Part shown: one piece after another, positions 3,268-58,103 of the stretch | Layout of the letters: each line of letters starts with the position of its first letter | Position numbering within the stretch: position 1 is the first letter of the stretch | Source of the DNA: Mobula hypostoma | Lineage: Eukaryota | Reading direction: 5' to 3' | DNA: 64,000 bases | Assembly (NCBI RefSeq): GCF_963921235.1 | Contig: NC_086101.1 | Span: 12,400,001-12,464,000, forward strand | Position numbers and translations under genes: made by a program | Notes under the pieces: model-generated | Database searches by the model: none | What the model was told of the DNA's origin: nothing | The model's input: the letters and a program-made list of their open reading frames with translations, nothing else

Positions 3268-3269
3268 TA

Positions 3270-6220: not shown

Positions 6221-6346
6221 TGGGTGGCCATAAGTCTGGATATGTACAGACCACAACGGAAACGTATGTAAAGGATGGAAAGTTATTGAATGGTTTATTG
6301 TATATATAATTTATTTTTGTATAAAGTATATTTTAAAATAAAAAAA
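6221..6346 (+). mobile_element. Tx1-clade retrotransposon 3' end (subfamily a) at a deletion junction
   Basis: Matches the 3' UTR/A-tail at 11640-11750 and 27650-27774 (GGGTGGC.ATAA...GTTATTGAATGGTTTATTGTATATA...AATAAAAAAA). Confidence 0.75.
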
Positions 6347-8913: not shown

Positions 8914-10836
8914 TTAATCCACCTCCTCAATAGTTGGTCCGGCAGAACTGGCATTCCCAGCCTGTGCCCTGCACGATTCCCCTGCGGCTGCTCCTTGGTA
9001 CAGTTTGGCAATGATGGGATTGCAGAGTTTTTCCAGCTCTTTCTGCTTGTGCTCAAACTCCTCCTTCTCTGCCATCTGATTCTTCTCCAGCCAGGATATT
9101 GTCTCGTTGCACAGGTCAATGACTTTCCTCTTGTCCTCAGCACTGATCTTTCCGGCCATCTTCTCATCCTCCACAGAGCCCTTCATGTTGAAGGCATAGG
9201 ACTCCAGGGAGTTCTTGGCTGCAATCTTCTGCCGCTGCATTTCATCCTCATTCTTGTACTTCTCTGCATCTTGCACCATCCTGTCAATTTCCTCCTTACT
9301 CAGCCTGCCCTTGTCGTTGGTGATGGTGATCTTGTTTGTTTTCCCGGTGCTCTTGTCAACAGCAGAGACGTTGAGAATGCCATTGGCGTCAATATCGAAG
9401 GTCACCTCAATCTGGGGTACGCCACGAGGAGCGGGAGGGATGCCACTCAACTCAAACTTGCCCAGAAGGTTGTTGTCCTTGGTCATGGCTCTCTCACCTT
9501 CAAACACCTGAATAAGGACCCCAGGCTGGTTATCAGAGTAGGTGCTGAAGATTTGGGTCTGCTTGGTGGGGATTGTTGTGTTACGCTTGATAAGGGTGGT
9601 CATGACTCCACCTGCCGTCTCCAGCCCCAGTGACAGAGCAGCAACATCCAGGAGTAGCAGATCCTGAACATTCTCCGACTTGTCGCCCATCAGAATGGCC
9701 GCCTGGACAGCTGCCCCATAGGCCACGGCCTCATCGGGGTTGATGCTCTTGTTCAGCTCCCTACCGTTGAAGAAATCTTGCAGCAGCTTCTGGATCTTGG
9801 GGATTCGGGTGGAGCCTCCGACCAGGACAATTTCATGGATCTGGGATTTGTCCAGCTTGGCATCTCTCAGGGCTTTCTCCACTGGCTCCAGAGTGCCCCT
9901 GAACAGGTCAGAGTTCAGCTCCTCAAAGCGAGCCCTGGTGAGTGAGGTGTAGAAATCAACTCCCTCAAACAGAGAGTCAATCTCAATACTGGCTTGGGTG
10001 CTGGAAGACAGCGTTCTCTTTGCTCTCTCACAGGCCGTCCGCAGCCTCCTCACCGCTCTCTTGTTCTGGCTGATGTCTTTCTTGTATTTCCGCTTGAACT
10101 CCTCAATGAAGTGATTGACCATGCGGTTGTCAAAGTCCTCTCCTCCCAGGTGGGTATCTCCAGCTGTTGATTTCACTTCAAAGATACCGTCATCGATGGA
10201 GAGAATGGACACATCGAAAGTGCCACCACCCAGGTCAAAGATGAGAACATTACGCTCCCCTTTGCCTTTCTTGTCCAGACCATAGGCAATGGCAGCTGCT
10301 GTTGGCTCATTGATGACACGCAGGACATTGAGACCAGCTATCACACCAGCATCTTTGGTTGCCTGGCGTTGGGAGTCATTGAAGTAAGCAGGAACGGTGA
10401 TGACAGCGTTGGTGACTCTGCAGCCAAGGTAAGCCTCAGCAATTTCCTTCATCTTGGTCAGCACCATGGAGGAGATTTCCTCTGGGTAAAAGGTTTTGTT
10501 CTCCCCCTTGTACTCCACCTTCACCTTTGGCTTCCCCGCATCACTCACCACCTGGAAGGGCCAGTGCTTCATGTCAGAATGCACCGTCGGGTCATCAAAC
10601 CTTCTCCCGATGAGCCGCTTGGCATCAAAGATGGTGTTGGCGGGGTTCATTGCCACCTGGTTCTTTGCTGCATCACCGATGAGCCTCTCGGTGTCGTTGA
10701 AGGCCACATAGCTGGGGGTGGTGCGATTGCCCTGGTCATTGGCGATGATCTCCACCTTGCCATGTTGGAAGACCCCTACACAGGAGTAGGTGGTGCCCAG
10801 GTCGATACCGATGGCTGTCCCCTTTGATGCAGACAT
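8914..10836 (-). CDS. hsp70: Heat shock 70 kDa protein, inducible cytosolic type, intronless (copy A, 640 aa)
   Basis: Single ORF with [32 protein letters not shown] and a C-terminal GPTIEEVD. HSEs upstream; AATAAA at 8631-8636 (-). Confidence 0.98.
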
Positions 10837-11112: not shown

Positions 11113-11346
11113 GGTAATAGCGAGAAAGATCTGGTGCAGTCAAGGAGGTTCTGGCTGAAAACCGAGTCATTCGGGAACCTTTTGAAACACTTCTTAAACT
11201 ATACGAAACCAGCAATTTCTTCCGAAAGTTCCCTACACGCAAGAAAAAATCTCAAGCACCTTCTGGGGAGAGAATTCTCTGGCTTTAATGGACAAAGCAG
11301 CAAACAGGGAACGGCAGCTCTGGTTAATATCTGCAGGACGAAATTA

Positions 11347-11750
11347 TGTGCTGCTGGCAGATCATGAACTCGGTGAAAGACGCTCTTTGGTCGGCCCGAA
11401 ACTTGATGATCTACCAGCACATGGAGATGTCCGTGGGAGAATGCTGCCGACTGGCACATTCTCGACTGCAGGAGTACGTGCTGAGGGACGCACTGAAACT
11501 TGGTGCAGCCACCGCAAGGGCCCGGTGGGGAAGGACCACAGTATAGGTTTCTCCACCCGTGGGAGTGGGAGGGGTCGGAGGGCGTGGTGTATACCCCTCA
11601 ACAATGATATGCTAAGCTGAACTACTGGAGTGCCACGTGGGTGGCTATAAATACGGATATGTACTGACTATAATGGAAACGTATGGAAAGTTACTGAATG
11701 GTTTATTGTATATATTTATTTTTGAATAAAGTATATTTTGAAATAAAAAA
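11347..11750 (+). mobile_element. Tx1-clade retrotransposon, 5'-truncated (ORF2 C-terminus, 3' UTR, A-tail; subfamily a)
   Basis: CCWQIMNSVKDALWSARN...ECCRLAHSRLQEYVLRD...WGRTTV*, then AATAAA and an A-tail. Absent from the paralogous promoters of B (GACGAAATTAGTAAC at ~35147) and D. Confidence 0.82.
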
Positions 11751-12387
11751 ACAGAGCACTTCAAAGAAGCATAGAACTGAAAGGCAGAGTTTATGACATT
11801 AAATTTTGACAAAAGGACTTTTGCAGTGTTTGTGACCATAACAGGACGTGACGTGGAGTTTAAAAAATATTATCAGACTGGCAGAAATGATGGTAAAGTT
11901 TGCGCGAGAAGTTTTTTTTTGTTTTGGTATAGATATACAGGTTCACATGTCATAATTACTCCTTTTGCAGCCCTAGCATAGTATATTGCTAAGGGAAGGT
12001 GACTTAAACAGGTTAAAATAAATTATCCGTAACGCAGCGATGTTAGTGTTGTCAGATTCTCCCAGACTCTGCACCAGATCTACCTCGCCACCTCCAGAAT
12101 TATCGCAAAGTTCCGGCGGCTTGCGAGCTCTCAGCGATACTCCCCGTGTAGAGTCGGTTATGAAACAAACATCGAGTGTGTATGTCGTGTGGGGATAATA
12201 TTGTTTTTCAGATTTATGTAACGACAATTTACGATGGAAAACATTTATTCTATTTGTTAATGGGATTGAAATTTACCCGATGACTTTTTAGTGAGTTTCT
12301 ATCGAGGTTGACAGCGCTGAACTCCACCTCACCTCTGACCGGGAGCCTTTTTCTTTCTTTAGCCATGGATTGGCCAGAATACAGCAT

Positions 12388-16189: not shown

Positions 16190-16735
16190 TCAATCTTCAA
16201 CTAAAAGATGCACTTTTAAAGGAATTGCAAACACCTGTGGAAATGAAGCTGTTGCTTTCAGACCAGTGAATAAAGTGAGATGCTGTCTAGACACGTTATA
16301 CTGCAGGCAATCATAAACATGTATGAGGCATTGATTGTATATTTTGAGGACGATATTACAGAAGAAATATTGTCACAATAAGTTGATAAGCAGTGAATAA
16401 AAATAGCTTTAGAGCTGTTAAATGATGTCTTTGAAGAAGAGGCTGCACTGTTGAAGACTCTGCAAAGGAGTGTCTTAATGACAATTGATGCACTTCATTT
16501 TGCACGAGGCAAAATTAACAAGATAAGAAAGAAGCATCTGGGAGACAAAGAGTCTTGGAGTGAGGAAGTTAAATTTTTCTGAGCTACAGTTGTGACAGTA
16601 GCTACAAATTCTCTGTTGACCTTGATAAGCTATCTCTGTGTTCATTTAGAAGAGAGGTTTCCTGAGGGCGAGGTACAAGGACGGGAGGCTTTTGATTTTT
16701 CTGTGCGTGCAGACTGTGACCTCCAGTTTGGCAAA
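16190..16735 (+). mobile_element. hAT transposase central remnant
   Basis: Degenerate frame ...YLCVHLEERFPE..., contiguous with the hAT C-terminal peptide in the inverted copy at 58104-59000. Confidence 0.55.
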
Positions 16736-17045
16736 GACCAGAAGAGATTTAATTTTATTTGGCATAAGGTTGTGTACAGGCAGTTTGGACCGAAAGATCC
16801 GTTCGTGTGCTGTCCTGTGTTCACTCTCCCCTCATAAGTGAAAAGCTAACAGCCCTGCAACATCCTGGCTAATCTCCCCTTCACCCTTTTCAGCGCAATC
16901 CCGGTCTGCGGGGCCGGGGACGGGGTCACCTGTTCATTCACCCAGTACAGCAGCTAATTAAATAATCTAGATTTGCGGCATTTGTGGTAACGGTATTCTA
17001 GGAGGAGCACGTGGAATAGTAGGAAATAGATCTTTAAAACATTTG

Positions 17046-17066
17046 TTCGCCTGATTATTGAGGGGT
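17046..17066 (+). promoter_or_regulatory. Putative snRNA proximal sequence element (PSE)
   Basis: TTCGCCTGATTATTGAGGGG at about -60 from the U1 start; conserved at the same spacing before the second U1 copy (~27445). Confidence 0.55.
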
Positions 17067-17106
17067 GTGGGTTAAGCATGCATGCGGATGGCAGAGAAGA
17101 AAAAGC

Positions 17107-17270
17107 ATACTTACCTGGCAGGGGAGAAACCGTGATCATTAAGGCGGTTCTCCCAGGACGAGGCTATCCCATTGCACTTCGGGTGTGCTGACGCCTGCGA
17201 TGTCCCCAAATGCGGGATACTCGACTGCAAAATTTGTGGTAGTGGGGGACTGCGTTCGCGCTCTCCCCTG
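17107..17270 (+). ncRNA. RNU1: U1 spliceosomal snRNA, full length (164 nt)
   Basis: 5' ATACTTACCTGG; loop II ATTGCAC; Sm site AATTTGTGG; terminal stem GGGGGACTGCGTTCGCGCTCTCCCCTG. Same length as canonical U1; 3'-box-like TCTAAAAACAGG follows. Confidence 0.97.
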
Positions 17271-20469: not shown

Positions 20470-23400
20470 TCAGAACCCCGCCCCAGCCTTCCCTCCATAC
20501 CCCCTGATCCCCGTAGCCACAAGGGCCATATCTAACTCCCTCTTAAATATAGCCAATGAACTGGCCTCAACTGTTTCCTGTGGCAGAGAATTCCACAGAT
20601 TCACCACTCTCTGTGTGAAGAAGTTTTTCCTAATCTCGGTCTTAAAAGCCTTCCCCTTTATCCTCAAACTGTGGCCCCTTGTTCTGGACTTCCCCAACAT
20701 CGGGAACAATCTTCCTGCATCTAGCCTGTCCAATCCCTTTAGGATTTTATACATTTCAATCAGATCCCCCTCAATCTTCTAAATTCCAACGAGTACAAGC
20801 CCAGTTCATCCAGTCTTTCTTCATATGAAAGTCCTGCCGTCCCAGGAATCAATCTGGTGAACCTTCTTTGTACTCCCTCTATGGCAAGGATGTCTTTCCT
20901 CAGATTAAGGGACCAAAACTGCACACAATACTCCAGGTGTGGTCTCACCAAGGCCTTGTACAACTGCAGTAGTACCTCCCTGCTCCTGTACTCGAATCCT
21001 CTCGCTATAAATGCCAGCATACCATTCGCCCTTTTCACCGCCTGCTGTACCTGCATGCCCACTTTCAATGACTGGTGTATAATGACACCCAGGTCTCGTT
21101 GCACCTCCCCTTTTCCTAATCGGCCACCATTCAGATAATAATCTGTTTTCCTATTTTTGCCACCAAAGTGGATAACTTCACATTTATCCACATTAAATTG
21201 CATCTGCCATAAATTTTCCCACTCACTCAACCTATCCAAGTCACTCTGCATCCTCTTAGCATCCTCTTCACAGCTAACACTGCCACCCAGCTTCGTGTCA
21301 TCCACAAACTTGGAGATGCTGCATTTAATTCCCTCATCCAAGTCATTAATATATATTGTAAACAACTGGGGTCCCAGCACTGAGCCTTGCAGTACCCCAC
21401 TAGTCACCGCCTGCCATTCTGAAAAGGTCCCGTTTATTCCCGCTCTTTGCTTCCTGTCTGCTAACCAATTCTCCACCCACACCAATACCTTACCCCCAAT
21501 ACCGTGTGCTTTAAGTTTGCACACTAATCTCCTGTGTGGGACCTTGTCAAAAGCCTTTTGAAAATCCAAATATACCACATCCACTGGTTCTCCCCTATCC
21601 ACTCCACTAGTTACATCCTCAAAAAATTCTATGAGATTCGTCAGACATGATTTTCCTTTCACAAATCCATGCTGACTTTTTCCGATGTTTCACCGCTTTC
21701 CAAATGTGCTGTTATTACATCTTTGATAACTGACTCCAGCAGTTTCCCCACCACCGACGTTAGGCTAACCGGTCTATAATTCCCCGGTTTCTCTCTCCCT
21801 CCTTTTTTAAAAAGTGGGGTTACATTAGCCACCCTCCAATCCTCAGGAACTAGTCCAGAATCTAACGAGTTTTGAAAAATTATCACTAATGCATCCACTA
21901 TTTCTTGGGCTACTTCCTTAAGCACTCTAGGATGCAGACCATCTGGCCCTGGGGATTTATCTGCCTTCAATCCCTTCAATTTACCTAACACCACTTCCCT
22001 ACTAACATGTATTTCGCTCAGTTCCTCCATCTCACTGGACCCTCTGTCCCCTACTATTTCTGGAAGATTATTTATGTCCTCCTTAGTGAAGACAGAACCA
22101 AAGTAATTATTCAATTGGTCTGCCATGTTCTTGCTCCCCATAATCAATTCACCTGTTTCTGTCTGTAGGGGACCTACATTTGTCTTTACCAGTCTTTTCC
22201 TTTTTACATATCTATAAAAGCTTTTACAGTCAGTTTTTATGTTCCCTGCCAGTTTTCTCTCATAATCTTTTTTCCCCTTCCTAATTAAGCCCTTTGTCCT
22301 CCTCTGCTGAACTCTGAATTTCTCCCAGTCCTCAGGTGAGCCACTTTCTCTGGCTAATTTGTATGCTTCTTCTTTGGAATTGATACTATCCCTAATTTCT
22401 CTTGTCAGCCACGGGTGCACTACCTTCCTTGATTTATTCTTTTGCCAAACTGGGATGAACAATTGTTGTAGTTCTTTCATGCAACCTTTAAATGCTTGCC
22501 ATTGCATATCCACCGTCAATCCTTTAAGTGTCATTTGCCAGTCTATCTTAGCTAATTCACGTCTCATATCTTCAAAGTTATCCCTCTTTAAGTTCAGAAC
22601 CTTTGTTTCTGAAATAACTATGTCACTCTCCATCTTAATGAAGAATTCCACCATATTATGGTCAGTCTTACCCAAGGGGCCTCTCACGACAAGATTGCTA
22701 ATTAACCCTTCCTCATTGCTCAAAACCCAGTCCAGAATAGCCTGCTCTCTAGTTGGTTCCTCGACATGTTGGTTCAAAAAACCATCCCGCATACATTCCA
22801 AGAAATCCTCTTCCTCAGCACCTTTACCAATTTGGTTCACCCAATCTACACGTAGATTGAAGTCTCCCATTATAACTGCTGTTCCTTTATTGCACACATT
22901 TCTATTTTCCTGTTTAATACCATCTCCGACCTCACTACTACTGTTAGGTGGCCTGTACACAACTCCCACCAGCGTCTTCTGCCCCTTAGTGTTACGCAGC
23001 TCTACCCATATCGATTCCACATCTTCCCGGCTTATGTCCTTCCTTTCTATTGCATTAATCTCTTCTTTAACCAGCAACACCACCCCACCTCCCCTTCCTT
23101 CATATCTATCCCTCTTGAATATTGAATATCCCTGAACGTTGAGCTCCCATCCTTGGTCACCCTGGAGCCATGTCTCTGTGATCCCAACTATATCATAATC
23201 ATTAATAACAATCTGCACTTTCAATTCATCCACCTTATTACGAATGCTCCTTGCATTGACACACAAAGCCTTCAGGCGCTCTTTTACAACTCTCTTAGCC
23301 CTTATACAACTATGTTGAAAAGTGGCCCTTTTTAATGCTTGCCCTGGATTTGTCGGCCTGCCACTTTCACTTTTCTCCTTAGTACTTTTTGCTTCTACCC

Positions 23401-23500
23401 TCACTTTACACCCCTCTGTCTCTCTGCACTGGTTCCCACCCCTCTGTTGTGAACTAACCTCCTCACGCCTAGCCTCTTTAATTTGATTCCCACCCCCCAA
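20470..23500 (-). pseudogene. CR1 ORF2 (APE endonuclease + reverse transcriptase), two frameshifts
   Basis: NARSI, ITETWL, VYRPP, GDFN, SPGPDG, YRPVSLTS, KFVDDTKL. Frames break at ~21660 and ~20757. Confidence 0.9.
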
Positions 23501-23505
23501 CCATT

Positions 23506-24465
23506 CTAGTTTAAAGTCACCTCAGTAGCCCTCGCTAATCTCCCTGCCAGGATATTGGTCCCCCTAGGATTCAAGTGTAACCCGTCCTTTTTGTAGAGGT
23601 CACGCCTGCGCCAAAAGAGGTCCCAATGATCCAAAAACATGAATCCCTGCCCCCTGCTCCAATCCCTCAGCCACCCATTTATCCTCCACCTCATTGCATT
23701 CCTACTCTCACTGTCGCGTGGCACAGGCAGTAATCCCGAGATTACTACCTTTGCGGTCCTTTTTCTCAAGTCCCTTCCTAGCTCCCTATATTCTCCTTTC
23801 AGGACCTCATCCCTTCTCCTACCTATGTCATTGGTACCTATATGTACCACGACCTCTGGCTCCTCACCCTCCCACTTCAGGATATCTTGGACACGATCAG
23901 AAATATCCCGGACCCTGGCACCAGGGAGGCAAACTACCATCCGGGTCTCTGGACTGCGTCCACAGAATCGCCTATCTGACCCCCTTACTATCGAGTCCTC
24001 TATCACAACTGCCCTCCTCTTCCTTGCCCTACCCTTCTGAGCTGCAGGGCCAGACTCTGTGCCCGAGGCACGGCCACTGTCGCTTCCCCCGGGTAAGCTT
24101 TCCCCCCCAACAGTACTCAAACAGGAGTACCTATTGTTAAGGGGCACAGCCACCGGGGTACTCCCTATTACCTGACTCTTCCCCTTCCCCCTCCTAACCG
24201 TGACCCACTTGTCTGCCTCCCGTGGCCCCGGCGTGACCACCTGCCTGCAACTCCTCTCTATCAACTCCTCACTCTCCCTGACCAGACGAAGGTCATCGAG
24301 CTGCAGCTCCAGTTCCCTAACGCGGTCCCTTAGGAGCTGCATCTCGATGCACTTGGCACAGATGTCGACATCCGGGAGGCTTGGAGACTCCAGGGCCTCC
24401 CACATCCGACACCGAGAACAGCAAACTGCCCTCATCCTCATACTGCCCCTCTCCTCAAATAACAA
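23506..24465 (-). CDS. CR1 ORF1 (zinc finger/coiled coil + SGNH esterase-like domain), 319 aa
   Basis: CxxC...CxxC, VIEDSIVR (GDS block, G changed to E), HIGTND, DGLHLN. Confidence 0.85.
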   Translation of the reverse strand: MLFEERGSMRMRAVCCSRCRMWEALESPSLPDVDICAKCIEMQLLRDRVRELELQLDDLRLVRESEELIERSCRQVVTPGPREADKWVTVRRGKGKSQVIGSTPVAVPLNNRYSCLSTVGGESLPGGSDSGRASGTESGPAAQKGRARKRRAVVIEDSIVRGSDRRFCGRSPETRMVVCLPGARVRDISDRVQDILKWEGEEPEVVVHIGTNDIGRRRDEVLKGEYRELGRDLRKRTAKVVISGLLPVPRDSESRNAMRWRINGWLRDWSRGQGFMFLDHWDLFWRRRDLYKKDGLHLNPRGTNILAGRLARATEVTLN

Positions 24466-27269: not shown

Positions 27270-27500
27270 TGCAAACCAATCGTGGCGCACATTTCCTTTT
27301 TTAGAAAACATGCAGATTAACGTCTAGGAATTATCAGTGCTAAAGCACAGAAGCTAATCAAATAAATAGATTTGTGGTATTTGTGGCAACGGTATTCTGG
27401 AAGGAGCACGTGGAATAGTAGGAAATAGATCTTTAAAAGATTTGTTCGCCTGAATATTGAGGGCTGTGGGTTAAGCATGCATACGGATGCATAAAAAAGG
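27270..27500 (+). promoter_or_regulatory. U1 promoter: CCAAT, octamer-like ATGCAGAT + SPH-like element (DSE), PSE
   Basis: CCAAT at ~27276; ATGCAGAT at 27310; TAGGAATTATCAG at ~27325 (about -190); PSE-like TTCGCCTGAATATTGAGGG at ~27445. Confidence 0.6.
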
Positions 27501-27511
27501 GATATTTATCT

Positions 27512-27936
27512 GCAAACAAGAGGAATTCTGCAGATGCTGGAAGTTCAAGCAAGGTTTCTCCACCCGTGGGAGTGGGAGGGGTCGGAGGGCGGGGAGTATA
27601 CCCCTCAACAATGAAATGATATGGTAAGCTGAACTACTGGAGTGCCACGTGGGTGGCTATAAATACGGGTATGTACTGTGCATAATGCAAACGTATGTAA
27701 AGGATGAAAAGTTATTGAATGGTTAATTGTATATATTTATTTTTGAATAAAGTATACTTTGAAATATAAAAAAAACATACATCAAAGTTGCTGGTGAACG
27801 CAGCAGGCCAAGCAGAAGGAAGACTCTTCCTTCAGTTAGTCCTGACGAAGGGTCTCGGCCTGAAACGTCGACTGCGCCTCTTCCTATAGATGCTGCTTGG
27901 CCTGCTGCGTTCACCAGCAACTTTGATGTATGTTGC
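27512..27936. mobile_element. Penelope-associated palindromic insertion at the U1 5' end, with a nested Tx1 3' end (27553-27774)
   Basis: 14-bp target duplication AGGGATATTTATCT at 27498-27511 and 27937-27950. Internal inverted repeat ACATCAAAGTTGCTGGTGAACGCAGCAGGCCAAGCA. Confidence 0.8.
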
Positions 27937-27940
27937 AGGG

Positions 27941-28005
27941 ATATTTATCTAACCGGGGAGAGACCGTGATCGTGAAGGCTGTTTTCCCAGGACGAGGCTA
28001 ACCCA
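27941..28005 (+). pseudogene. U1 snRNA 5' part (nt 1-65), degenerate
   Basis: ATATTTATCTAACCGGGGAGAGACCGTGATCGTGAAGGCTGTTTTCCCAGGACGAGGCTAACCCA aligns without gaps to 17107-17171. Confidence 0.88.
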
Positions 28006-29237
28006 CCGTTCTTCTAAGAACGTAGCGGTTCTTGCTGTGCTCGGAACGGAGAGATCTTTGTTTGGGAGAGGATCTGGCGCTGACGGCGCTGCTGAACGTG
28101 CTCTCTCTGAACAACGAAGGAAAAGGATGGCTGGTAAGACCAGCGCATGAGGAGGGAGTGTTGCAGAGACCAGCGACTCAGAGGAAAGAGCTGAGGGCTA
28201 TAACGACCAGCGCATCAATGATGCAGACCGGAGAATCCGGCGTAGCGGCGACTTCTGGAAAGTCCAGCCAATCAGAGAAGAGAGTTGCGGAGTCCATCGA
28301 ATCGGGGAAGAGAGCCGGGGAGACCGGCGAATCGGGGAAGAGAGCGGGGGAGACCGGCGAATCGGGGAAGAGAGCCGGGGAGGCCGGCGAATCGGGGAAG
28401 AGAGCCCGGGAGACCGGCGCACCGAGGAGGACGTCGAGGGAGACCAGCCCTTCCGCTCGTGGAGCTGGTATCAAGAACACTGTGCGAATGAGTGTCAAGG
28501 ATCTGAAGGATGGCAACGGCTTCAATCGGATTACCTTCATTCGTAAGGTGCTTTTCGATTGCTGCGGCTTTAAGGTAGACGATCTGTACTGCGTGCAGGA
28601 TTTCCCGAGTTACTATGATATCACCTTCCGGCGTGCCGTGGGGTGGCAGGGACTGCTCCAGTGCTTCTCCGAGAAAGGGAGCGAGGCGCCGCTGTCGCTA
28701 TTTAAAGTGCAACCTCTCTTTGCCGTGGCAACGCAGGAGTGAACAATTGCGATACAGATGTTTAATATCTATGTGCCTGTCGTCGACGTTCTCACGTTCC
28801 TCGCGTGATATGTAGAGAGCGTGGGGAGGTGTGAGGCCGTCGACGACAGTCTGGAGGTTTGGACATCTGAACGGCAGGTCAGAGTAAAGTTAAGGATGTG
28901 GGAGTGGGAGGGGTTGGGTGGGGAGGAGACCTACCTTCATCAGCGGTGTGGACAGATAATCAACATGGTGCCCAAGGAGTGGGTGGAATTGTTAATTTGG
29001 GAAAGTATTAGAGCCATCGCGTGCCTTTATTGTTGATAATTTTATTGTTAATAAGTCTTAACTGTTGACCAAGGATTGAGAGTAAATGAATGGTTTATCG
29101 TAAACGTCTTTCATTTGTAAATGAACAGAGAGTCAACGCATAATTTTATTGTTAATAACTTTGTTGAATAAGGACTCAGAGTCAACGACTGTTTTTTCAT
29201 GTAACACTTCTGAATAAAGTAGCTTTGGAAAAAAAAA
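28006..29237 (+). mobile_element. Internally deleted Tx1-clade retrotransposon inserted in U1 (5' region + ORF1 N-half fused to 3' UTR and poly(A); subfamily b)
   Basis: ORF1 peptide DLYCVQDFPSYYDITF...MFNIYVPVVDVLTFL...VWTSERQVRVKLR resembles Tx1 ORF1/ZCCHC3-like proteins and has in-frame stops. It joins the 3' UTR at ~28898. AATAAA and A-tail at 29213-29237. Flanked by duplicated U1 nt 40-65. Confidence 0.85.
28295..28420 (+). repeat. 30-bp tandem repeat (~4 copies) in Tx1 ORF1
   Basis: GAATCGGGGAAGAGAGCCGGGGAGACCGGC units encoding ESGKRAGETG. Confidence 0.9.
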
Positions 29238-29355
29238 GGTTCTCCCAGGACACCCTTTGCACTTCGGGTGTGCTGACGCCTGCGATGTCCCCAAATGCGG
29301 GATACTCGATTGCAAAATTTGTGGTAGTGGGGGACTGCGTTCGCGCTCTCCCCTG
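29238..29355 (+). pseudogene. U1 snRNA 3' part (nt 40-164, small internal deletion)
   Basis: GGTTCTCCCAGGAC...TTGCACTTCGG...AATTTGTGG...CTCTCCCCTG, followed by 3'-box-like ATTTAAAGACAGA. Confidence 0.92.
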
Positions 29356-30077
29356 ATTTTCAATTTAAAGACAGAAGGGTCTCTGGTTCAGTTTTGTGTT
29401 TTCTCCCTATGTCGCGTGAATTGACGACCGCCGGTTAATTTGGAATCTCTCGGTGCCTCTAGACAACTGCTCATCTAACCACTCGCTTACTTTACCTTAT
29501 AAGGTTACAATATTAATTCAGCCTTTCAGTTGTTCCGTTCTCTCAACCAACCAAAGAAGAATACTGTACTTATACTGTAACAAATTGCGCATCAACTTCT
29601 TATTTAGTAAGAGATGATAAGCAACGACAGAAGAAGGTGAGAAAAATAACAATAGGTGCCGGAAACAACCACTCACACCACATCTGCAGAAAAGGACAAA
29701 CACGAGAAAATCTGCAGATCCCGTGCCACATCATACAATAAATGCTGGGGGCCCTGCTGAACGGTCTCGGCGGCTGCTTACCTTATCCCATCGTTTTTTA
29801 AAATATATATATATTTAATAAAATTACTTACAATAAACCATTCAATAACTCTGAATTCATGATTCATTCTAAACAGTTTAAACATTTTAGTCAGTCACGT
29901 GGCTCTTGCTCGTTCATCTTCTACAATACAACCGTAGTTGAGGGGTATACTCCCCGCCACCCAACCCGTCCCACTCGCACGGGAGAAGAACCATTCATCG
30001 GATTTTTTCCAACTTTTAGACGCAAGGCGATGTTTCCTCCCTTGATAGCTGGATCCAGGAATCATAGTCTCAAAATA

Positions 30078-31530
30078 GATACTTGTCGAATCTTAGATTT
30101 TATTACTGGGCAACTAATATTCGATATTTAACGTTTTGGACGCAAGAGTTCGATGTCCACGATGGATGAACCTCGAGGGGCAGTCTGTACAGGGGTTTTC
30201 GCTGGCTTCCATTTTCGGAGCTGCGCTTGAATAAACAAATGATAAATCCAACAATTAAACATACAGTACGAATATGGTTTCAATTTCGTATATTTTTTGG
30301 ATTGAATAAATTGATCTTGTCAAGTTCAATGATATCTAATTTTTTCTTTCAATCATCTAGAATTGATCAAGCTTTTCTTCTATGGAAAAACAAAGGGAAT
30401 AACATGTTTTCGTGATTTATTCATGGATGATTGTTTTAAGTCTTTTGAACAGTTGTCTAATAAATATAATTTGCCCAGATCACACGTTTTCCAGATATTT
30501 ACAGGTTAGAAACTTTATGAACGCTACTTTACCTATTTTTCCGATATCGCATCAAATTGAAGTTACAGAAAAATGTTTAGGTTTAAACCCCAATTAGGAG
30601 AGATTAATAGTAATTATTTATGATTTCATTACGCAAATACGTCTAGGTACATCTGATAAAATTAAGAATGAGGGGAAAGAGAACTTCAAATATCTTTATC
30701 TACAAAGAACTGGGAGAAAATTTTTCGACTGGTTAATACTTCTTCAATGTGTGCCAAACACGCCCTGACACGAGTTAAGGTGGTTCACAGGGCACATATA
30801 TCCAAGGATAAGTTAGCTCGTTTTTAGTGCCACATAAATCCTGTTTGTGATAGATGTAATACTGAAGTAGCTTCCTTGACACATATGTTCTAGGAAAATA
30901 TTGGAAAGATATTTTTGGTACTGTGTCAGTAGTTCTGTGTGTTGATTTACAACCTCACCCTATTACTGCAATTTTTGGACTACCAGTGACAGACTCCAGT
31001 CATTTATCCTCATCAGCTTGTCGTCTAATTGCATTATGTACATTAATAGCCAGAAGATCCATTCTATTTCAATGGAAATATTCCAACCCCCCTACTACAT
31101 TTCATTGGTTTTCCCAAACGATAGCACGTTTAAACTTGGAAAAAATTGGGTGCGGTGCTATGGATCCTTCGGTTAAATTTGAAGAAACTTGGAGGCCATT
31201 TATTCAATACTTTCATATCATGTAAGCTGACCCTTTCTGAATCCTTTTTTTTAGTAATTTTTTTTCTCCATGTAAAGAGGAGCGGAGTTAATGACAAATT
31301 ATAATTTTAACCGATGAAATATGGCAGCCCAACCTTTAGCTTTTTTTCAGTTTAGGGATTTTTCTTTTTCTCTCTCTATAAAATTTTGTTTTCATGGTTA
31401 GTTACTACACATTTATTACTTAGATTCTGTGGTTGTACATGTTAACCGTTTTTAATGCAATCCCGATCTCTATGTATCATTATTGCTATGTTTATTAATT
31501 TGAAACTTAATAAAAAGATTGAAAAAGAAA
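30078..31530 (+). mobile_element. L1-clade LINE, 5'-truncated (ORF2 C-terminal region)
   Basis: LSNLRFYYWATNI, FRYLQVRNF, CDRC...LTHMF, LIARRSIL..WK, ending AATAAAAAGATTGAAAAAGAAA. Confidence 0.85.
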
Positions 31531-32722
31531 GGATTTCAGGTTATTTAAATTTCACTTAAAGATGAGGTTGATAGTTTCTTGATTAGTGAGCGTATCAAAG
31601 GTTATCGATGGAGAGAAAGCAGGGGAATGGGATTAAGAAGGAAAATAAATCAGCAATGATCGAATACCAAAACAATATCGATGGGCTGAATGGACTCATT
31701 CTGTTCCTCTGTATGAAGGTGATTTAAATCAGGAGCTCAATAACCTATTGCTTACAGATATCTCTGCAAGGTTTGACATGATTACTAGGTAAAATACCTT
31801 GTAACTGCTAAAGTTCCTTTACATCCTGATACTCTATGATACGATGTTGGTGATAAACAGAAACGTCAACAGTTGTGCGGAGAACAGCTGGGAAAAGGCC
31901 CTTCCACCCAACTCGTCCAAGCCCCACACAGCATCCTCTCGGCTAGTCCCAGTTGCCCGCAACCTGTCAATCACCTCCCCTCCATATACCTGTCCAAACA
32001 CACACCTCAAAACTCAGCCTGCTGCCAATACCAATCGTTGTTCCCAGCATATGGGATTCTCTCCCAAGGCAGCAAATTAAGCTGTTTTTCGTGTCAATGC
32101 AGGAGCTACCAGCGAAGAGTAACATCACTAGATCTGTCAACTTTTTGGACTGGTCACCTTGTTGAAGAATCAAATGCCTTCTGATAAAGTAATGTCAAAC
32201 TGCACCTGTGAGAGTGGGGAAGTGTTGACAAAAGAGATCCAGAAAGAAGGTGTGCTGGAAATTAGAAGGAAGATATCCCTGGGAAAGGGAGGATGAGGAG
32301 GAAACATTCATTGATATACAGCAATAATTTAACACCCATAAATTGTTGACTTTATGTTTTTGAAAACAAAATGGCAAGTTTTCCTTCTCTGGTGATGAAA
32401 TATAATTACACCCAATTTTAAAAAATTAAAAGATTTATTAAAAGCATGTTACAAGAAACTTAAAACTGTACAAAGTTTACATTCCAAAACAAATGACATT
32501 AAAAAAAAAATACCCCAATACAAAAAACCCGATCAAAGGAACTGAATACAACTAGTTACCAGTGTTTACAATTAGTACATCACAGCCAGATTCAGGACAT
32601 TGACATGACCCAGTGGTGTTACAGTGAAGACTATTCCCAAGTGCCAACATTAGCATCAGACCCACTGAAGTGTCCAGAGAGCTCAAACCGTGCAAGCCCC
32701 AGACAGTCACATTTACAGTCCT

Positions 32723-34645
32723 TTAATCCACCTCCTCAATAGTTGGTCCAGCAGAACTGGCATTCCCAGCCTGTGCCCTGCACGATTCCCCTGCGGCTGC
32801 TCCTTGGTACAGTTTGGCAATGATGGGATTGCAGAGTTTTTCCAGCTCTTTTTGCTTGTGCTCAAACTCCTCCTTCTCTGCCATCTGATTCTTCTCCAGC
32901 CAGGATATTGTCTGGTTGCACAGGTCAATGACTTTCCGCTTGTCCTCAGCACTGATCTTTCCGGCCATCTTCTCATCCTCCACAGAGCCCTTCATGTTGA
33001 AGGCATAGGACTCCAGGGAGTTCTTGGCTGCAATCTTCTGCCGCTGCATTTCATCCTCATTCTTGTACTTCTCTGCATCTTGCACCATCCTGTCAATTTC
33101 CTCCTTACTCAGCCTGCCCTTGTCGTTGGTGATGGTGATCTTGTTTGTTTTCCCGGTGCTCTTGTCAACAGCAGAGACGTTGAGAATGCCATTGGCGTCA
33201 ATATCGAAGGTCACCTCAATCTGGGGTACGCCACGAGGAGCGGGAGGGATGCCACTCAACTCAAACTTGCCCAGAAGGTTGTTGTCCTTGGTCATGGCTC
33301 TCTCACCTTCAAACACCTGAATAAGGACCCCAGGCTGGTTATCAGAGTAGGTGCTGAAGATTTGGGTCTGCTTGGTGGGGATCGTTGTGTTACGCTTGAT
33401 AAGGGTGGTCATGACTCCACCTGCCGTCTCCAGCCCCAGTGACAGAGCAGCAACATCCAGGAGTAGCAGATCCTGAACATTCTCCGACTTGTCGCCCATC
33501 AGAATGGCCGCCTGGACAGCTGCCCCATAGGCCACGGCCTCATCGGGGTTGATGCTCTTGTTCAGCTCCCTACCGTTGAAGAAATCTTGCAGCAGCTTCT
33601 GGATCTTGGGGATTCGGGTGGAGCCTCCGACCAGGACAATTTCATGGATCTGGGATTTGTCCAGCTTGGCATCTCTCAGGGCTTTCTCCACTGGCTCCAG
33701 AGTGCTCCTGAACAGGTCAGAGTTCAGCTCCTCAAAGCGAGCCCTGGTGATTGAGGTATAGAAATCAACTCCCTCAAACAGAGAGTCAATCTCAATACTG
33801 GCTTGGGTGCTGGAAGACAGCGTTCTCTTTGCTCTCTCACAGGCCGTCCGCAGCCTCCTCACCGCTCTCTTGTTCTGGCTGATGTCTTTCTTGTATTTCT
33901 GCTTGAACTCCTCAATGAAGTGATTGACCATGCGGTTGTCAAAGTCCTCTCCTCCCAGGTGGGTATCTCCAGCTGTTGATTTCACTTCAAAGATACCGTC
34001 ATCGATGGAGAGAATGGACACATCGAAGGTGCCACCACCCAGGTCAAAGATGAGAACATTACGCTCCCCTTTGCCTTTCTTGTCCAGACCATAGGCAATG
34101 GCAGCTGCTGTTGGCTCATTGATGACACGCAGGACATTGAGACCAGCTATCACACCAGCATCTTTAGTTGCCTGGCGTTGGGAGTCATTGAAGTAAGCAG
34201 GAACGGTGATGACAGCGTTGGTGACATTGTAGCCAAGGTAAGCCTCAGCAATTTCCTTCATCTTGGTCAGCACCATGGAGGAGATTTCCTCTGGGTAAAA
34301 GGTCTTGTTCTCCCCCTTGTACTCCACCTTCACCTTTGGCTTCCCCGCATCACTCACCACCTGGAAGGGCCAGTGCTTCATGTCGGAATGTACCGTCGGG
34401 TCATCAAACCTCCTCCCGATGAGCCGCTTGGCATCAAAGATGGTGTTGGCGGGGTTCATTGCCACCTGGTTCTTGGCTGCATCACCGATGAGCCTCTCGG
34501 TGTCGTTGAAGGCCACATAGCTGGGGGTGGTGCGGTTGCCCTGGTCATTGGCGATGATCTCCACTTTGCCATGCTGGAAGACCCCCACACAGGAGTAGGT
34601 GGTGCCCAGGTCGATACCGATGGCTGTCCCCGTTGATGCAGACAT
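32723..34645 (-). CDS. hsp70: Heat shock 70 kDa protein, inducible, intronless (copy B, 640 aa)
   Basis: All three HSP70 signatures intact; EEVD C-terminus; AATAAA at 32434-32439 (-). Confidence 0.98.
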
Positions 34646-34747
34646 CTGTGTTTCTGACGAAAGCTCCGACGTTCTGTATTGAAATACCGGAAGGAATTCC
34701 TTGCTTCTCCAAGCCGATCGTTACTGCCTGGTCCGCTGCTTCGTCCC

Positions 34748-34920
34748 TTAATATAGTCCCAGCGCAGCGGTGTGGGCGGTGTTTTGTTCTTGAGGGACGA
34801 CCCGTAAACCAATGAAAACGCCGGCGAGTGACTCACGGCCGAAGGTTGGAGAAGGTTCTGAGACGGCGGCCAATCACAGCGCTGCTAGTCGGAGACGTGC
34901 CGGGACTTCGCGAAAATTCT
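34748..34920 (-). promoter_or_regulatory. HSP70-B promoter (TATA, CCAAT, AP-1, HSEs)
   Basis: TATATTAA (-) at 34748-34755; HSE cTTCg cGAAa aTTCt at 34906-34920; aGAAg gTTCt at ~34850. Confidence 0.88.
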
Positions 34921-36088
34921 GGTAATAGCGAGAAAGATCTGGAGCAGTCAGGGAGGTTCCGGCTGAAAACCAAGTCATTCGGGAACCCTTTGAAACACTT
35001 CTTAAACTATACGAAACCAGCAATTTCTTCCAAAAGTTCCCTACACGCAAGAAAAAATCTGAAGCACCTTCTGGGGAGAGAATTCTTTGGCCTTAAGGGA
35101 CGAAGCCAGCAAACAAGGAACGACAGCTCTGGTTAATACCTGCAGGACGAAATTAGTAACAGAATACTTAGAGGAAGTGTAGAACTGAAAGTCAGAGTTT
35201 GTGACATTTAATTTTGACAAAAGGACTTTTGCGGTGTTTGTGACCAGAAGAGGACTTGACACGAAGTTTAAAAAAATTATTAGATTGACAGAAGTGATGG
35301 TGAAGTTTCCGCGAGAAGTTTTTTTTTGATTTGCGTTTTAAACATACAGGGTTTAAATGTCATAAATAATCTTTTTACAGCCCCCGTATAGTACATTGCA
35401 AGGAGAAGGTGATAGAAGCAAATTAAAATAAATTATCCGTAACGCAGCGATGTCAGTATAATCAAATCCTCCCAGACTCTGCACCAGATCTACCTCGCCA
35501 CTTCCAGAACTTTCGCAAGTCCCTGCGGCTCCCAGCGCTAATACCCATGTAGTGTCGGTGTATGGTGTGGGGATAATATTGTTGTTCAGATTTATGTAAC
35601 GACAATTTACGATGGAAGCATTTATTTTATTTGTTAATGGGATTGAAATTTACCCGATGACTTTTTAGTGACTTGCTGTTGAGGTTGACAGCGCTGAACT
35701 CCACCTCACCTCTGACCGGGAGCCTTTTTCTTTCTTTAGCCGTGGATTGGCCAGAATACAGCATGACATTGTACGATTGAGTGGCGATCTTAGATATTTG
35801 GCGACAGTGCGGAAAGTAATTAATGAAGGTAAAATCAGCATGTATATTTATGAATGGTGTAAAAAGCAGAACAGCATCAATTTTATTTTATATCTGTGGG
35901 GTTGGCAAGCTTTCGAGTCTAATTTGGCTCAATGGTGAGACGTAGTCTTGCAGGATACAGGAGACTTGTGGAGGTTGCGGATAATATCCGGTATTATTAG
36001 CGCGTTGACTTGCTGTTGGAGGTTCCCTTGGCCCGAAAGTGCAAGGGGCTAGAATGTACAGCTCAGGATTGGGTTAGTCTCAGGCGTA

Positions 36089-56624: not shown

Positions 56625-56749
56625 CAGGGGAAAGCGCGAACGCAGTCCCCCACTACCACAAATTTTGCAGTCGAGTATCCCGCATTTGGGGACATCGCAG
56701 GCGTCAGCACACCCGAAGCGCAAAGGGATAGCCTCGTCCTGGGAGAACC
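56625..56749 (-). pseudogene. U1 snRNA 3' part (exactly nt 40-164)
   Basis: Minus strand reads poly(A)-GGTTCTCCCAGGACGAGGCTATCCCTTTGCGCTTCGG...AATTTGTGG...TTTCCCCTG; 125 nt. Confidence 0.93.
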
Positions 56750-58103
56750 TTTTTTTTCAAAGATACTTTATTCAGAAGTGTTACAAAATAAAGTTAATTA
56801 CATAAAGAAAAAAAACATTCGTTGACTCTGAGTCCTTATTCAATAAAGTTACTAACAATAAAAATTATGCGTTGACTCTCTGTTCATTTACAAATGAAAG
56901 ATGTTTACAATAAACCATGCATTTACTCTCAACCCTTGGTCAAGGGTTAAGACTTATTAACAATCAAATTATCAACAATAAAGGCAGGCAATGGCTCTAA
57001 TACTTTCCCAAATTAACAATTCCACCCACTCCTTGGGCACCATGTTGATTATCTGTCCACACCGCTGAAGAGGGTTAGTCTCCTCCCCACCCAACCCCTC
57101 CCACTCCCACGGGTGATGAACGTTAAACTGTGCTCCTTCCCCACCGGGCCTTCGCGGTGGCCACACCAAGCTGGAGTGCATCCCTCAGCACGGACTCTTG
57201 CAGACGAGAGTGTGCCAGTCGGCAGCATTCAATCACGGACATCTCCATCTGCTGGCAGACCATCAAGTTTCGGCCGACCAAAGACCAAGTTTCACCGATT
57301 TGATGATCTGCCAGCAGCACCGAATGTTTGTCTCCGTGTGCGTCCCCGGGAACAGCCCGTAGATCACGGAGCCCTCGGTAACGCAGCTGCTGGGCATGAA
57401 TCCTAGTACTGTCCCTTCCATTCTCTTCCACACCTTCTTCGCGAACCCACAGTGTGCAAAGAGGTGAGCCCCCGACTCCACCCCATTACAGTCCTCCCGT
57501 GGGCAGTGGGGTGTGGAGGAACCGTTCCGGGCGTACAGGAGGGATCTGACTGGGAGGGCCCCTCTCACCGCCAGCCAGGCTAGGTCTTTGTGCCTATTGG
57601 TGAGATCTGGCGATGAGGCATTTTGCCAGATGAACTGGATGGTCTGCTCAGGGAATCACCCCACTGTGTCCATTACGTCCTTCTCCTGCAGTGCCTGCAG
57701 GACATTACGTGCCGACCACTGTCTAATGGCCCTGTAGTCAAATTCGTTGGCCTTGAAGAATTTTTCCATGAAGGACAGGTAAGGAGGCAACGACCAGCTG
57801 ACAGGGGTGTTGCGCGGGAAAGGGGCCAGACCCATCCTTCGTAGCCAGGGCGACAGGTAAAACCTGGGCACATAGTAGTACTTTGTGCCCACGTATCTGG
57901 GATCCACGCACAACCTGATGCAGCCACACACGAAGCTGGTCATCAGGGTGAGGGCGACATTGGGGACGTTCTTGCTCCCGTTGTCCAGGTACCTGTGCAT
58001 GGCGGTCCGCTCACCCGCTCCATCTTGGATCCCCAGACGAATCTGAAGACAGCTCGTGTGATTTTCGAGCTGTCGGAGCGGGGGACGGGCCACACCTGCT
58101 TCG
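56750..58103 (-). mobile_element. Tx1-clade retrotransposon 3' portion (ORF2 C-terminus with CCHC, 3' UTR, poly(A); subfamily b) inserted in U1
   Basis: FRFVWGSKMERV, NGSKNVPNVAL, GALPVRS, CPREDC...ESGAHLFAHC, ECCRLAHSRLQE. The 3' UTR matches 28898-29237. Confidence 0.88.

What the first reader, a model, noticed from the sequence alone, without database searches (positions are those of the whole stretch)
27941..29355. Tx1-clade retrotransposon inserted in U1 snRNA at a defined site (candidate U1-specific element)
Seen: a U1 gene is split as U1 nt 1-65 | element with Tx1-like ORF1, AATAAA and poly(A) | U1 nt 40-164. This implies a ~26-bp target-site duplication of U1 nt 40-65, with a few mismatches and a small deletion. 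A second copy (56750-58103, minus) has its poly(A) abutting the same nucleotide, U1 nt 40. Established: the Tx1 group contains sequence-specific families (Keno in U2 snRNA, Mutsu in 5S rRNA, Dewa in tRNA arrays). Inference: this is a U1-targeting family nicking at U1 nt 39/40. Whether it is already catalogued cannot be checked here. The two copies could also descend from one insertion that was later duplicated with the cassette.
Basis: partly seen in the sequence, partly recalled or inferred. Interest (0 to 1): 0.88.

Follow-up and report, generated by a model that had tools for sequence, protein, structure and literature searches.

The report
LINE retrotransposon inserted in U1 gene
A poly(A)-type LINE retrotransposon really did insert into a U1 snRNA gene of this ray-like fish, but the window's two copies come from one insertion that was later duplicated, so whether the family specifically targets U1 genes is still open (about even odds).

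Summary
At 27941-29355 a U1 gene in its native cassette reads U1 nt 1-65 | 1232-bp LINE remnant | U1 nt 40-164. The remnant has a 5' UTR, the front of ORF1, a 3' UTR, AATAAA and A9. U1 nt 40-65 is duplicated, as a target-primed insertion would leave it. A second copy (56625-58097, minus) has the same poly(A)/U1 nt 40 junction.

The two copies are not independent. They lie in a ~6-kb inverted U1-HSP70 segmental duplication. The 3' UTR is 94% identical between copies, the U1 piece 97% and the flank 92-98%, and both share the U1 variant T65. The window therefore shows one certain event.

Family-level U1 specificity was not tested decisively. The 3' UTR has roughly 1000 copies by summed depth. A sister subfamily (84% identical at the ORF2 end) has non-U1 flanks here and in two other species.

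Some things favour targeting: a G/C-rich nick site, sense orientation, depth that hints at a multicopy U1|5'-end junction in a second species, unequal decay of the two U1 halves, and unchecked scan notes of similar junctions at other loci of this genome.

Tx1-clade membership is plausible but untested, because the window holds no APE or RT. The papers I could search report no U1-targeting retrotransposon.

The parts
27342..27502 (+). U1 promoter-proximal region of the disrupted cassette
   Evidence: 87% identical to 16942-17106 upstream of the intact U1. This shows the U1 5' piece sits in a native U1 locus.
27512..27937 (.). Later, unrelated insertion at U1 nt 10/11: a hairpin-forming repeat with a nested B-type LINE 3' end (about 27553-27775). 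It is flanked by a 13-bp direct repeat at 27499-27511 and 27938-27950.
   Evidence: Sequence. Repeat coordinates. Other copies of the hairpin repeat at 4335-4455 and 48485-48626.
27941..28005 (+). U1 snRNA nt 1-65, decayed (83% identical to the intact U1). Its last 26 nt (27980-28005) are the 5' copy of the target-site duplication.
   Evidence: Alignment; BLAST E=2e-13; identity.
28006..28217 (+). 5' UTR of the inserted LINE (copy 1)
   Evidence: Lies between the U1 nt 65 junction and the first in-frame ATG of ORF1. 28031-28255 is single-copy in a DNA run of the same species.
28218..28897 (+). ORF1, front part only. It holds five 30-nt tandem repeats (28270-28419) and a ZCCHC3-type RNA-binding domain (about 28473-28700). 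There is a stop at 28740-28742, then a decayed in-frame continuation to the breakpoint.
   Evidence: ORF list; Pfam PF23057 E=2.7e-13; TRF; translation; fold model best matches ZCCHC3.
28898..29228 (+). 3' UTR of the LINE. It begins 12 nt after the ORF2 stop as seen in copy 2, so 28897/28898 is a deletion breakpoint that removed the rest of ORF1 and all of ORF2.
   Evidence: 94.2% identical to 57110-56758 of copy 2. In other genomic copies the sequence before 28898 is the ORF2 end (loose ends).
29213..29237 (+). AATAAA (29213-29218) and poly(A) A9 (29229-29237)
29238..29355 (+). U1 snRNA nt 40-164 (7-nt deletion of about nt 54-60; 97.5% identical otherwise). 29238-29256 is the 3' copy of the target-site duplication.
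   Evidence: Rfam; alignments.
56625..56749 (-). U1 snRNA nt 40-164 of copy 2 (97.6% identical to the intact U1; shares T65 with copy 1)
   Evidence: Rfam 81.2 bits.
56750..57122 (-). Copy 2 poly(A) (56750-56757), AATAAA (56767-56772 on the plus strand) and full 3' UTR
57123..58097 (-). Copy 2 ORF2 C-terminal region in three frames, with frameshifts and a weak zf-RVT match. It is cut at about 58097, where a hAT-like repeat fragment begins.
   Evidence: ORFs; Pfam zf-RVT E=5e-5, 24.2 bits, below the 27.5 cut-off; 84% amino-acid identity to a Hypanus sabinus protein over 38% of the query; repeat match 58097-58442 vs 3720-3338.
17107..17270 (+). Intact U1 snRNA gene used as the reference target
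   Evidence: Rfam RF00003, 158.6 bits, full length.

Best explanation
A poly(A)-tailed LINE of a chondrichthyan lineage inserted by target-primed reverse transcription into a U1 snRNA gene, in the same orientation as U1. Relatives of this lineage carry an apurinic-type endonuclease, a reverse transcriptase and a C-terminal zinc-binding domain. ORF1 has a ZCCHC3-type RNA-binding domain, so the element belongs to the L1/Tx1 group and is most likely Tx1-like. The bottom strand was nicked between U1 nt 39 and 40, and the exposed 3' OH primed cDNA synthesis on the poly(A) tail. The top strand was opened about 26 nt downstream (nt 65/66), which duplicated U1 nt 40-65. These steps are read directly from the two junctions. 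Later, copy 1 lost everything between mid-ORF1 and 12 nt past the ORF2 stop. The right-hand part (3' UTR, U1 3' piece, flank, HSP70) was copied in an inverted ~6-kb segmental duplication, which produced copy 2. The inferred part is that this 'A' subfamily prefers this U1 site, like Keno in U2, and that full-length copies are probably transcribed from the U1 promoter with a U1 nt 1-65 leader. The window itself records only one certain insertion event.
For: Junction anatomy, target-site duplication and native promoter and 3' flank. One event plus duplication: a continuous 94-98% match of 28898-34970 to 57110-50457. By segment the identities are 3' UTR 94.2%, U1 96.6% and flanks 92.5-98.2%, and T65 is shared. 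The nick site (bottom strand ...GAACC|GCCTT...) is G/C-rich, not the A/T-rich site of L1-type nicking (my own knowledge of L1). The insertion is in sense orientation. Depth: in a second species (X29) the bin spanning the U1 nt 46-65 | element 5' end junction has depth 468. That is close to ORF1 depth (430-520), while the bin before it has 28. This suggests a multicopy U1|5'-end junction, but it is an inference from bins; the contigs were not listed. The two U1 halves decayed unequally: 11/65 changes against 3/118 (Fisher p=0.0004 for the counts 11/65 vs 2/111 that I tested). That fits a U1 leader inherited with the element, or two separate insertions joined by a deletion; both imply a lasting association with U1. 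Tx1-clade families are known to target snRNA and other multicopy genes (PMC4494074, PMC4640811). Leads only, unchecked: scan notes s1-141816, s1-141817, s1-141933 and s1-144355 report similar U1 junctions at other loci of this genome.
Against: Only one independent event is demonstrable here. By summed contig depth the 3' UTR has about 1000 copies in the same species (3000-5700 against 3.4 for a single-copy contig). That is many for a U1-restricted family. The sister B subfamily (83.7% identical at the ORF2 end, similar 3' terminus) has poly(A) tails followed by non-U1 sequence at 6348, 11752 and 27776, and in loci L001 and L002 from two other species. A Heterodontus relative lies inside a SAND/SAM-domain gene. 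U1 pseudogene cassettes here collect other repeats too: the hairpin repeat at U1 nt 10/11, and a B 3' end where the U1 of cassette 1 should be. A chance hit on a neutral pseudogene is therefore not negligible. No contig bridging poly(A) into U1 was listed, but contigs that carry human-like U1 are filtered out, so this absence means nothing.
Confidence: 0.5

Rival explanations
1. An abundant LINE family with no target specificity hit a U1 (pseudo)gene once by chance. The hit was then duplicated with the U1-HSP70 cassette. The shared nt 39/40 junction reflects common descent, not endonuclease specificity.
For: The two copies lie in one segmental duplication, with equal divergence in element and flank. 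The 3' UTR has about 1000 copies. B-subfamily copies and relatives in other species sit at unrelated sites. Other repeats also landed in the same U1 cassettes.
Against: A U1 gene is a 164-bp target. The nick site is G/C-rich. Depth hints at a multicopy U1|5'-end junction in another species. The asymmetric decay of the U1 halves needs an extra assumption. Unchecked scan notes report the same kind of junction on other chromosome regions.
Confidence: 0.35
2. Copy 1 is a composite of two independent insertions at the same U1 site in neighbouring cassettes. One is an old insertion (promoter, U1 nt 1-65, 5' UTR, ORF1). The other is younger (ORF2 end, 3' UTR, U1 nt 40-164). A single deletion at 28897/28898 joined them. 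This is a sub-case of the targeting model.
For: The U1 5' piece is 83% identical to the intact U1, about as diverged as the upstream flank and promoter (87-88%). The U1 3' pieces are 97.5% identical although their flanks are 71-84% identical. The two copies of the target-site duplication differ at 4 of 26 positions. The nearest family contigs differ by 8-15% over ORF1 but by 1-7% over the 3' UTR. The left half carries two further nested repeat insertions.
Against: A simple internal deletion within one element explains the ORF1|3' UTR junction equally well. Gene conversion of the 3' piece by functional U1 genes, or a U1 leader carried in with the element RNA, could also produce the asymmetry. 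The larger number of 3' UTR copies biases the nearest-contig distances.
Confidence: 0.25
3. This is not an insertion into U1 but a chimera. Either the U1 nt 1-65 head was added by template switching onto U1 snRNA, or the U1 nt 40-164 tail was carried along by read-through (3' transduction) and moved with the element. A related reading is a U1-headed, SINEU-like non-autonomous unit.
For: U1- and U2-headed Tx1 families and SINEU exist in crocodilians (PMC4494074). Scan note s1-144004 proposes this reading. Copy 1 is short (1.2 kb) and lies downstream of a U1 promoter.
Against: Both U1 pieces sit in native U1 context: promoter homology upstream and about 700 nt of U1 3'-flank homology downstream. 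The overlap at nt 40-65 is what a target-site duplication predicts. 28031-28255 is single-copy in the species' own DNA run, so the unit has not amplified. The RNA run gives zero depth over 28031-28660.
Confidence: 0.04

Closest known systems
Keno (Tx1-clade non-LTR retrotransposons specific for U2 snRNA genes; Kojima & Fujiwara 2004, as described in PMC4494074 and PMC4640811)
   Same: A poly(A)/APE-type LINE inside a spliceosomal snRNA gene at a defined nucleotide. The proposed logic is the same: a multicopy, conserved, transcribed target.
   Different: The target here is U1 (nt 39/40), not U2. Recurrent independent insertion has not been shown. No RT phylogeny links this element to Keno.
Tx1L of Xenopus laevis and other target-preferring Tx1 families (Mutsu in 5S rRNA, Dewa in tRNA spacers, Kibi/Koshi in microsatellites, Tx1-Mar in a Mariner transposon)
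   Same: Two-ORF LINE with a poly(A) tail. ORF1 is not of the mammalian L1 type. The clade is known for changing target specificity.
   Different: Clade membership is untested because the window has no APE or RT. The closest subfamily (B) shows no common target.
Dada-U1 DNA transposons of zebrafish (PMC3706591)
   Same: According to PMC4640811 (2015), these were the only mobile elements reported to target U1 snRNA genes.
   Different: They are DDE DNA transposons with a 6-bp target-site duplication at a different U1 site (GCGAAT, 3' half of U1). They are not retrotransposons.
U1-headed Tx1 families (Tx1-2_Crp, Tx1-4_AMi) and SINEU of crocodilians (PMC4494074)
   Same: U1-derived sequence is joined to the 5' end of a Tx1-type element. 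A U1 nt 1-65 leader would arise here if transcription starts at the U1 promoter.
   Different: Those families insert into Mariner or LTR elements, not U1. Here both flanks are a native U1 gene, and the unit is single-copy.
Utopia (restriction-like-endonuclease LINEs specific for U2 genes, PMC4640811)
   Same: snRNA-gene-specific retrotransposon with a precise 3' junction and a variable 5' junction.
   Different: Different endonuclease class and a different target.

Membership tests
Tx1 clade of non-LTR retrotransposons | ORF2 with an N-terminal apurinic-like endonuclease and an RT that clusters with Tx1L/Keno in an RT phylogeny | not testable with these tools
   Neither window copy retains APE or RT. 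A distant relative, P0086, has APE + RVT_1 + zf-RVT, but I could obtain no Tx1 or L1 reference sequences for a tree. The Atlas automatic name 'Transposon TX1 149 kDa protein' appeared only at rank 79 for P0086.
Tx1 clade of non-LTR retrotransposons | ORF1 with an RNA-binding (RRM-like) domain plus CCHC knuckles, not the L1 Transposase_22 type (my own knowledge of ORF1 types) | tested here: inconclusive
   ORF1 matches PF23057 (ZCCHC3 first RNA-binding domain, E=2.7e-13) and has no L1-type ORF1 match. The fold model best matches ZCCHC3. The CCHC part is lost to the deletion. Swiss-Prot's Tx1 ORF1 was not among the 30 fold hits.
Tx1 clade of non-LTR retrotransposons | 3' end with a polyadenylation signal and poly(A) tail; C-terminal zinc-binding motif in ORF2 | tested here: inconclusive
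   AATAAA and an A8-A9 tail are present in both copies. The zf-RVT match in copy 2 is weak: E=5e-5, 24.2 bits, below Pfam's 27.5 cut-off. L1 shares these features, so they would not discriminate anyway.
Target-site-specific LINE (U1-specific family) | Several independent insertions at the same nucleotide of the target | tested here: not met
   The two junctions in the window belong to one inverted segmental duplication, with equal divergence of element and flanks and a shared T65. A possible second event is only inferred from the unequal decay of the U1 halves.
Target-site-specific LINE (U1-specific family) | Most genomic copies of the family are flanked by the target sequence | not testable with these tools
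Protein searches found no junction-spanning ORFs, and a metagenome scan found nothing.
Target-site-specific LINE (U1-specific family) | Insertion within the target with a duplication of target sequence and a fixed orientation | tested here: met
   U1 nt 40-65 is duplicated and the element is in sense orientation inside a native U1 cassette.
SINEU-like / U1-headed non-autonomous retroposon | The U1-head + body unit is amplified at many non-U1 loci | tested here: not met
   28031-28255 has depth 3.4, which is only the window's own identical contig, in the same-species DNA run X25.

The most novel reading that the evidence does not exclude
The A subfamily is the first retrotransposon specific for U1 snRNA genes. 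It would be a chondrichthyan Tx1-group LINE whose endonuclease nicks U1 at nt 39/40. Its full-length copies would be transcribed from the U1 promoter with a U1 nt 1-65 leader, which helps the cDNA rejoin the target. It would have reached hundreds of copies in batoid genomes by repeated insertion into U1 arrays.
Probability: 0.45. Interest if true: 0.6.

Novelty: new member of a known kind. Interest (0 to 1): 0.42.

Why it matters
In the literature I could search, the mobile elements reported to target snRNA genes are Keno and Utopia (U2), a Tx1 family for U5, and the DNA transposons Dada-U1 and Dada-U6 (PMC4640811, PMC4494074). No retrotransposon that targets U1 is reported. A U1-specific LINE would add a new target to the Tx1-type repertoire. 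It would give a natural endonuclease with a defined G/C-rich site in a conserved gene. It would also offer a direct view of how U1-headed elements such as SINEU arise. If the family is not specific, the locus is an ordinary case of a LINE insertion decaying inside a duplicated U1-HSP70 cassette.

Tried and rejected
I did not resend those places.

2. Read laying on 27941-29280 identified the species run, gave copy-number estimates and showed the ORF2 end upstream of the 3' UTR. It cannot show what follows the poly(A), because contigs carrying U1 may be filtered and the tables are truncated. The zero depth after the poly(A) in X29 is therefore not evidence.

3. The ORF1 protein search gave no hit at E<=0.001. 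A search with the ORF that spans the junction gave no candidates.

4. A search with the ORF2 C-terminal piece found only chondrichthyan fragments. The loci I could fetch, L001 and L002, are B-like copies at non-U1 sites.

5. An exact-pattern scan of metagenome contigs for the junction gave 0 hits.

6. Atlas look-ups and a fold search did not settle the clade.

7. The ZCCHC3 papers gave nothing on the origin of that domain.

8. The 'U1-tailed by transduction' and 'template-switch head' readings were rejected because both flanks are native U1 cassette sequence.

9. The search of earlier findings by sequence came back blank.

Full report
**Observation**

Rfam finds one intact U1 gene (17107-17270, 158.6 bits) and two 5'-incomplete U1 matches that end at 29355 (+) and 56625 (-). 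I aligned the other pieces to the intact gene.
- 27941-28005 is U1 nt 1-65 (54/65 identical).
- 29238-29355 is U1 nt 40-164, with a 7-nt deletion of about nt 54-60.
- 56749-56625 (minus strand) is U1 nt 40-164.

Between the two copy-1 pieces lie 1232 bp (28006-29237) that end in AATAAA (29213-29218) and A9 (29229-29237). U1 nt 40-65 is present on both sides, which is the signature of a target-site duplication. Counting against the undeleted copy 2, 22 of 26 positions still match.

The U1 pieces are in native context. The 160 bp upstream of the U1 start are 87% identical to the promoter region of the intact gene. About 700 bp downstream of nt 164 are 71-84% identical to its 3' flank. This is therefore an insertion into a U1 gene. 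It is not a U1-headed or U1-tailed chimera that moved elsewhere.

**What the element is**

Copy 1 has these parts:
- a 5' UTR (28006-28217);
- the front of ORF1 (28218-28897), with five 30-nt tandem repeats and a domain matching Pfam PF23057, the first RNA-binding domain of ZCCHC3 (E=2.7e-13). A fold model of this domain also best matches ZCCHC3;
- a 3' UTR, joined directly to ORF1 at 28897/28898.

Copy 2 (minus strand, 58097 down to 56750) has the last ~330 codons of ORF2 in three frames. It has a weak zf-RVT match (E=5e-5, 24.2 bits, below Pfam's 27.5 cut-off), the ORF2 stop at 57125-57123, the full 3' UTR and A8.

Similarity between the two copies starts 12 nt after the ORF2 stop. Copy 1 has therefore lost the rest of ORF1 and all of ORF2.

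Relatives of the ORF2 C-terminus occur only in cartilaginous fishes: Hypanus sabinus (84% amino-acid identity over 38% of the query), Pristis pectinata, Heterodontus francisci and Rhincodon typus. A distant full-length relative has APE + RT + zf-RVT.

The element is thus a poly(A)-type APE LINE of the L1/Tx1 group, with an ORF1 that is not of the L1 type. The Tx1 label is plausible. It could not be tested, because the window has no APE or RT and I could obtain no reference sequences for a tree.

**The two copies are one event**

The window holds a family of U1-HSP70 cassettes. HSP70 ORFs of 640 aa lie at 8914-10836 (-), 32723-34645 (-) and 50781-52703 (+).

Cassette 3 (28898-34970) and cassette 4 (57110-50457) form one continuous inverted duplication at 94-98% identity. 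Either one is only about 74-76% identical to the intact U1 cassette.

Between the two copies, identity by segment is:

| Segment | Identity |
|---|---|
| 3' UTR | 94.2% |
| U1 piece | 96.6% |
| next 445 bp of flank | 92.5% |
| next 800 bp of flank | 98.2% |

Both copies share the U1 variant T65. The element is as diverged as its flanks, so the simplest history is one insertion followed by duplication of the cassette. The 5' end of copy 2 abuts a hAT-like repeat fragment (58097-58442, matching 3720-3338), not U1, so it was rearranged later.

**Is the family U1-specific?**

I could not run the decisive test. The genome is assembly GCA_963921235.1, but its file is too large to fetch. What I did learn falls on both sides.

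*Against specificity*
- A DNA run of the same species contains a contig identical to 27941-28337 at depth 3.4. Summed depth over the 3' UTR in that run is 3000-5700, which is roughly 1000 copies. ORF1 has 20-150, and 28031-28255 is single-copy.
- In other copies the sequence upstream of 28898 is the ORF2 end, so these are 5'-truncated LINE copies, not a SINE.
- A sister subfamily, which I call B, is 83.7% identical at the ORF2 end and has a similar last ~30 nt but a different 3' UTR. It occurs three times in the window (about 6230-6347, 11346-11751, 27553-27775) and in loci from two other species (L001, L002). Each time its poly(A) is followed by unrelated sequence.
- U1 cassettes here also collected other repeats. 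A hairpin repeat with a 13-bp duplication sits at U1 nt 10/11 (27499-27511 and 27938-27950). A B 3' end sits where the U1 of cassette 1 should be. Decaying U1 copies are therefore not immune to chance hits.

*For specificity*
- The nick site is G/C-rich, unlike L1-type sites (my own knowledge of L1).
- The insertion is in sense orientation.
- In a second species (run X29), the depth bin covering the junction of U1 nt 46-65 with the first 25 nt of the element reads 468. That is close to ORF1 depth (430-520), while the neighbouring U1 bin reads 28. This suggests that a U1|5'-end junction is multicopy in that species. It is an inference from bin depths; the contigs themselves were not listed.
- The two U1 halves decayed unequally (next section).
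- Other first-stage notes of this scan report similar U1 junctions about 19.3 Mb away and on another sequence piece (s1-141816, s1-141817, s1-141933, s1-144355). They are unchecked, so I use them only as leads.

**An unexplained asymmetry**

The U1 5' piece differs from the intact U1 at 11 of 65 positions (83% identity). That is about as diverged as the upstream flank and promoter, which are 87-88% identical. The U1 3' pieces differ at only 3 of 118 and 3 of 125 positions (97.5%), although their flanks are 71-84% identical. The Fisher test I ran gave p=0.0004; it used counts of 11/65 against 2/111.

Four histories could explain this:
- (a) faster local decay of the 5' piece;
- (b) gene conversion of the 3' piece by functional U1 genes;
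- (c) a U1 nt 1-65 leader that travelled with the element RNA from an old master copy;
- (d) two separate insertions in neighbouring cassettes, joined by the deletion at 28897/28898.

Options (c) and (d) would both imply a long-standing association of the family with U1. I cannot decide among the four.

**Mechanism**

Read from the junctions: a bottom-strand nick between U1 nt 39 and 40, priming on the poly(A) tail, and top-strand opening near nt 65/66, which gives the 26-bp duplication.

Inferred: the endonuclease prefers this site. Full-length copies are transcribed from the U1 promoter, and the U1 leader may guide 5' joining, as has been discussed for other target-specific LINEs (PMC4494074).

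My odds are about 0.5 for a U1-preferring family and about 0.35 for a non-specific family with a chance hit. Chimera models get only a few per cent. The two-insertions composite (0.25 in the rival list) is a sub-case of the targeting model and is counted within its 0.5.

**Comparison and novelty**

The closest known case is Keno, a Tx1-clade LINE specific for U2. PMC4640811 (2015) lists only Keno and Utopia (U2), Dada-U1 and Dada-U6 as snRNA-targeting transposons. PMC4494074 adds a Tx1 family targeting U5 and U1-headed Tx1 families that target a Mariner transposon. My full-text searches found no report of a U1-targeting retrotransposon. I could not consult Repbase or Dfam.

If confirmed, this would be a new member of a known kind. 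As it stands, the window documents one well-formed LINE insertion in a U1 gene and its later duplication.

That step is listed under referred steps.

Noticed in passing
window 8914-10836 (-), 32723-34645 (-), 50781-52703 (+), partial copy 62393-64000: Three complete intronless HSP70 ORFs of 640 aa, plus a partial fourth copy. Each is paired with a U1 cassette, so the window is a cluster of U1-HSP70 repeat units. The HSP70 parts are 96-98% identical while the U1 flanks are far more diverged, which suggests gene conversion or selection on HSP70.
   Followed up: partly
window 27499-27950: A second, unrelated insertion in the same U1 pseudogene at nt 10/11, flanked by a 13-bp direct repeat (27499-27511 and 27938-27950). 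It is a hairpin-forming repeat, also found at 4335-4455 and 48485-48626, and it carries a nested B-type LINE 3' end (27553-27775).
   Followed up: partly
window 5380-6347: A U1 promoter region (85-89% identical to the intact cassette) is followed not by U1 but by a truncated B-type LINE 3' end with poly(A) (about 6230-6347). The U1 gene and about 2.4 kb of its 3' flank are missing from this cassette.
   Followed up: partly
window 27941-28005 vs 29238-29355 and 56625-56749: The two halves of the split U1 decayed unequally. The 5' piece is 83% identical to the intact U1 and the 3' pieces 97.5%, although their flanks are only 71-84% identical. A Fisher test gave p=0.0004. This is unexplained.
   Followed up: partly
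window 20760-24465 (-): A near full-length LINE of a different kind. Its ORF1 has a GDSL-lipase/OSK-like esterase domain, followed by APE and RT ORFs interrupted by frameshifts or stops. It looks CR1/L2-like.
   Followed up: no
window 28270-28419: Five 30-nt tandem repeats, encoding a 10-residue repeat, lie in the N-terminal part of ORF1. A contig from a related species (run X29) skips 160 nt here (28199 to 28360), so this stretch, which includes the repeat array, may differ in length between copies or species.
   Followed up: no
window 58104-58598 (-), 16607-16739, 3338-3720: Fragments of a hAT-like repeat (164-aa ORF, no Pfam match). One abuts the truncated 5' end of copy 2. Another lies upstream of the intact U1 cassette; the two are 97.7% identical.
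   Followed up: no
L001 5190-6678 (assembly GCA_053455715.1): A sub-threshold U2 snRNA match (43.1 bits against a 46-bit cut-off) lies about 260 bp upstream of ORFs with an RT domain. This locus is 0.8 kb downstream of a B-like LINE 3' end. It may be a U2-associated, Keno-like element in another chondrichthyan.
   Followed up: no
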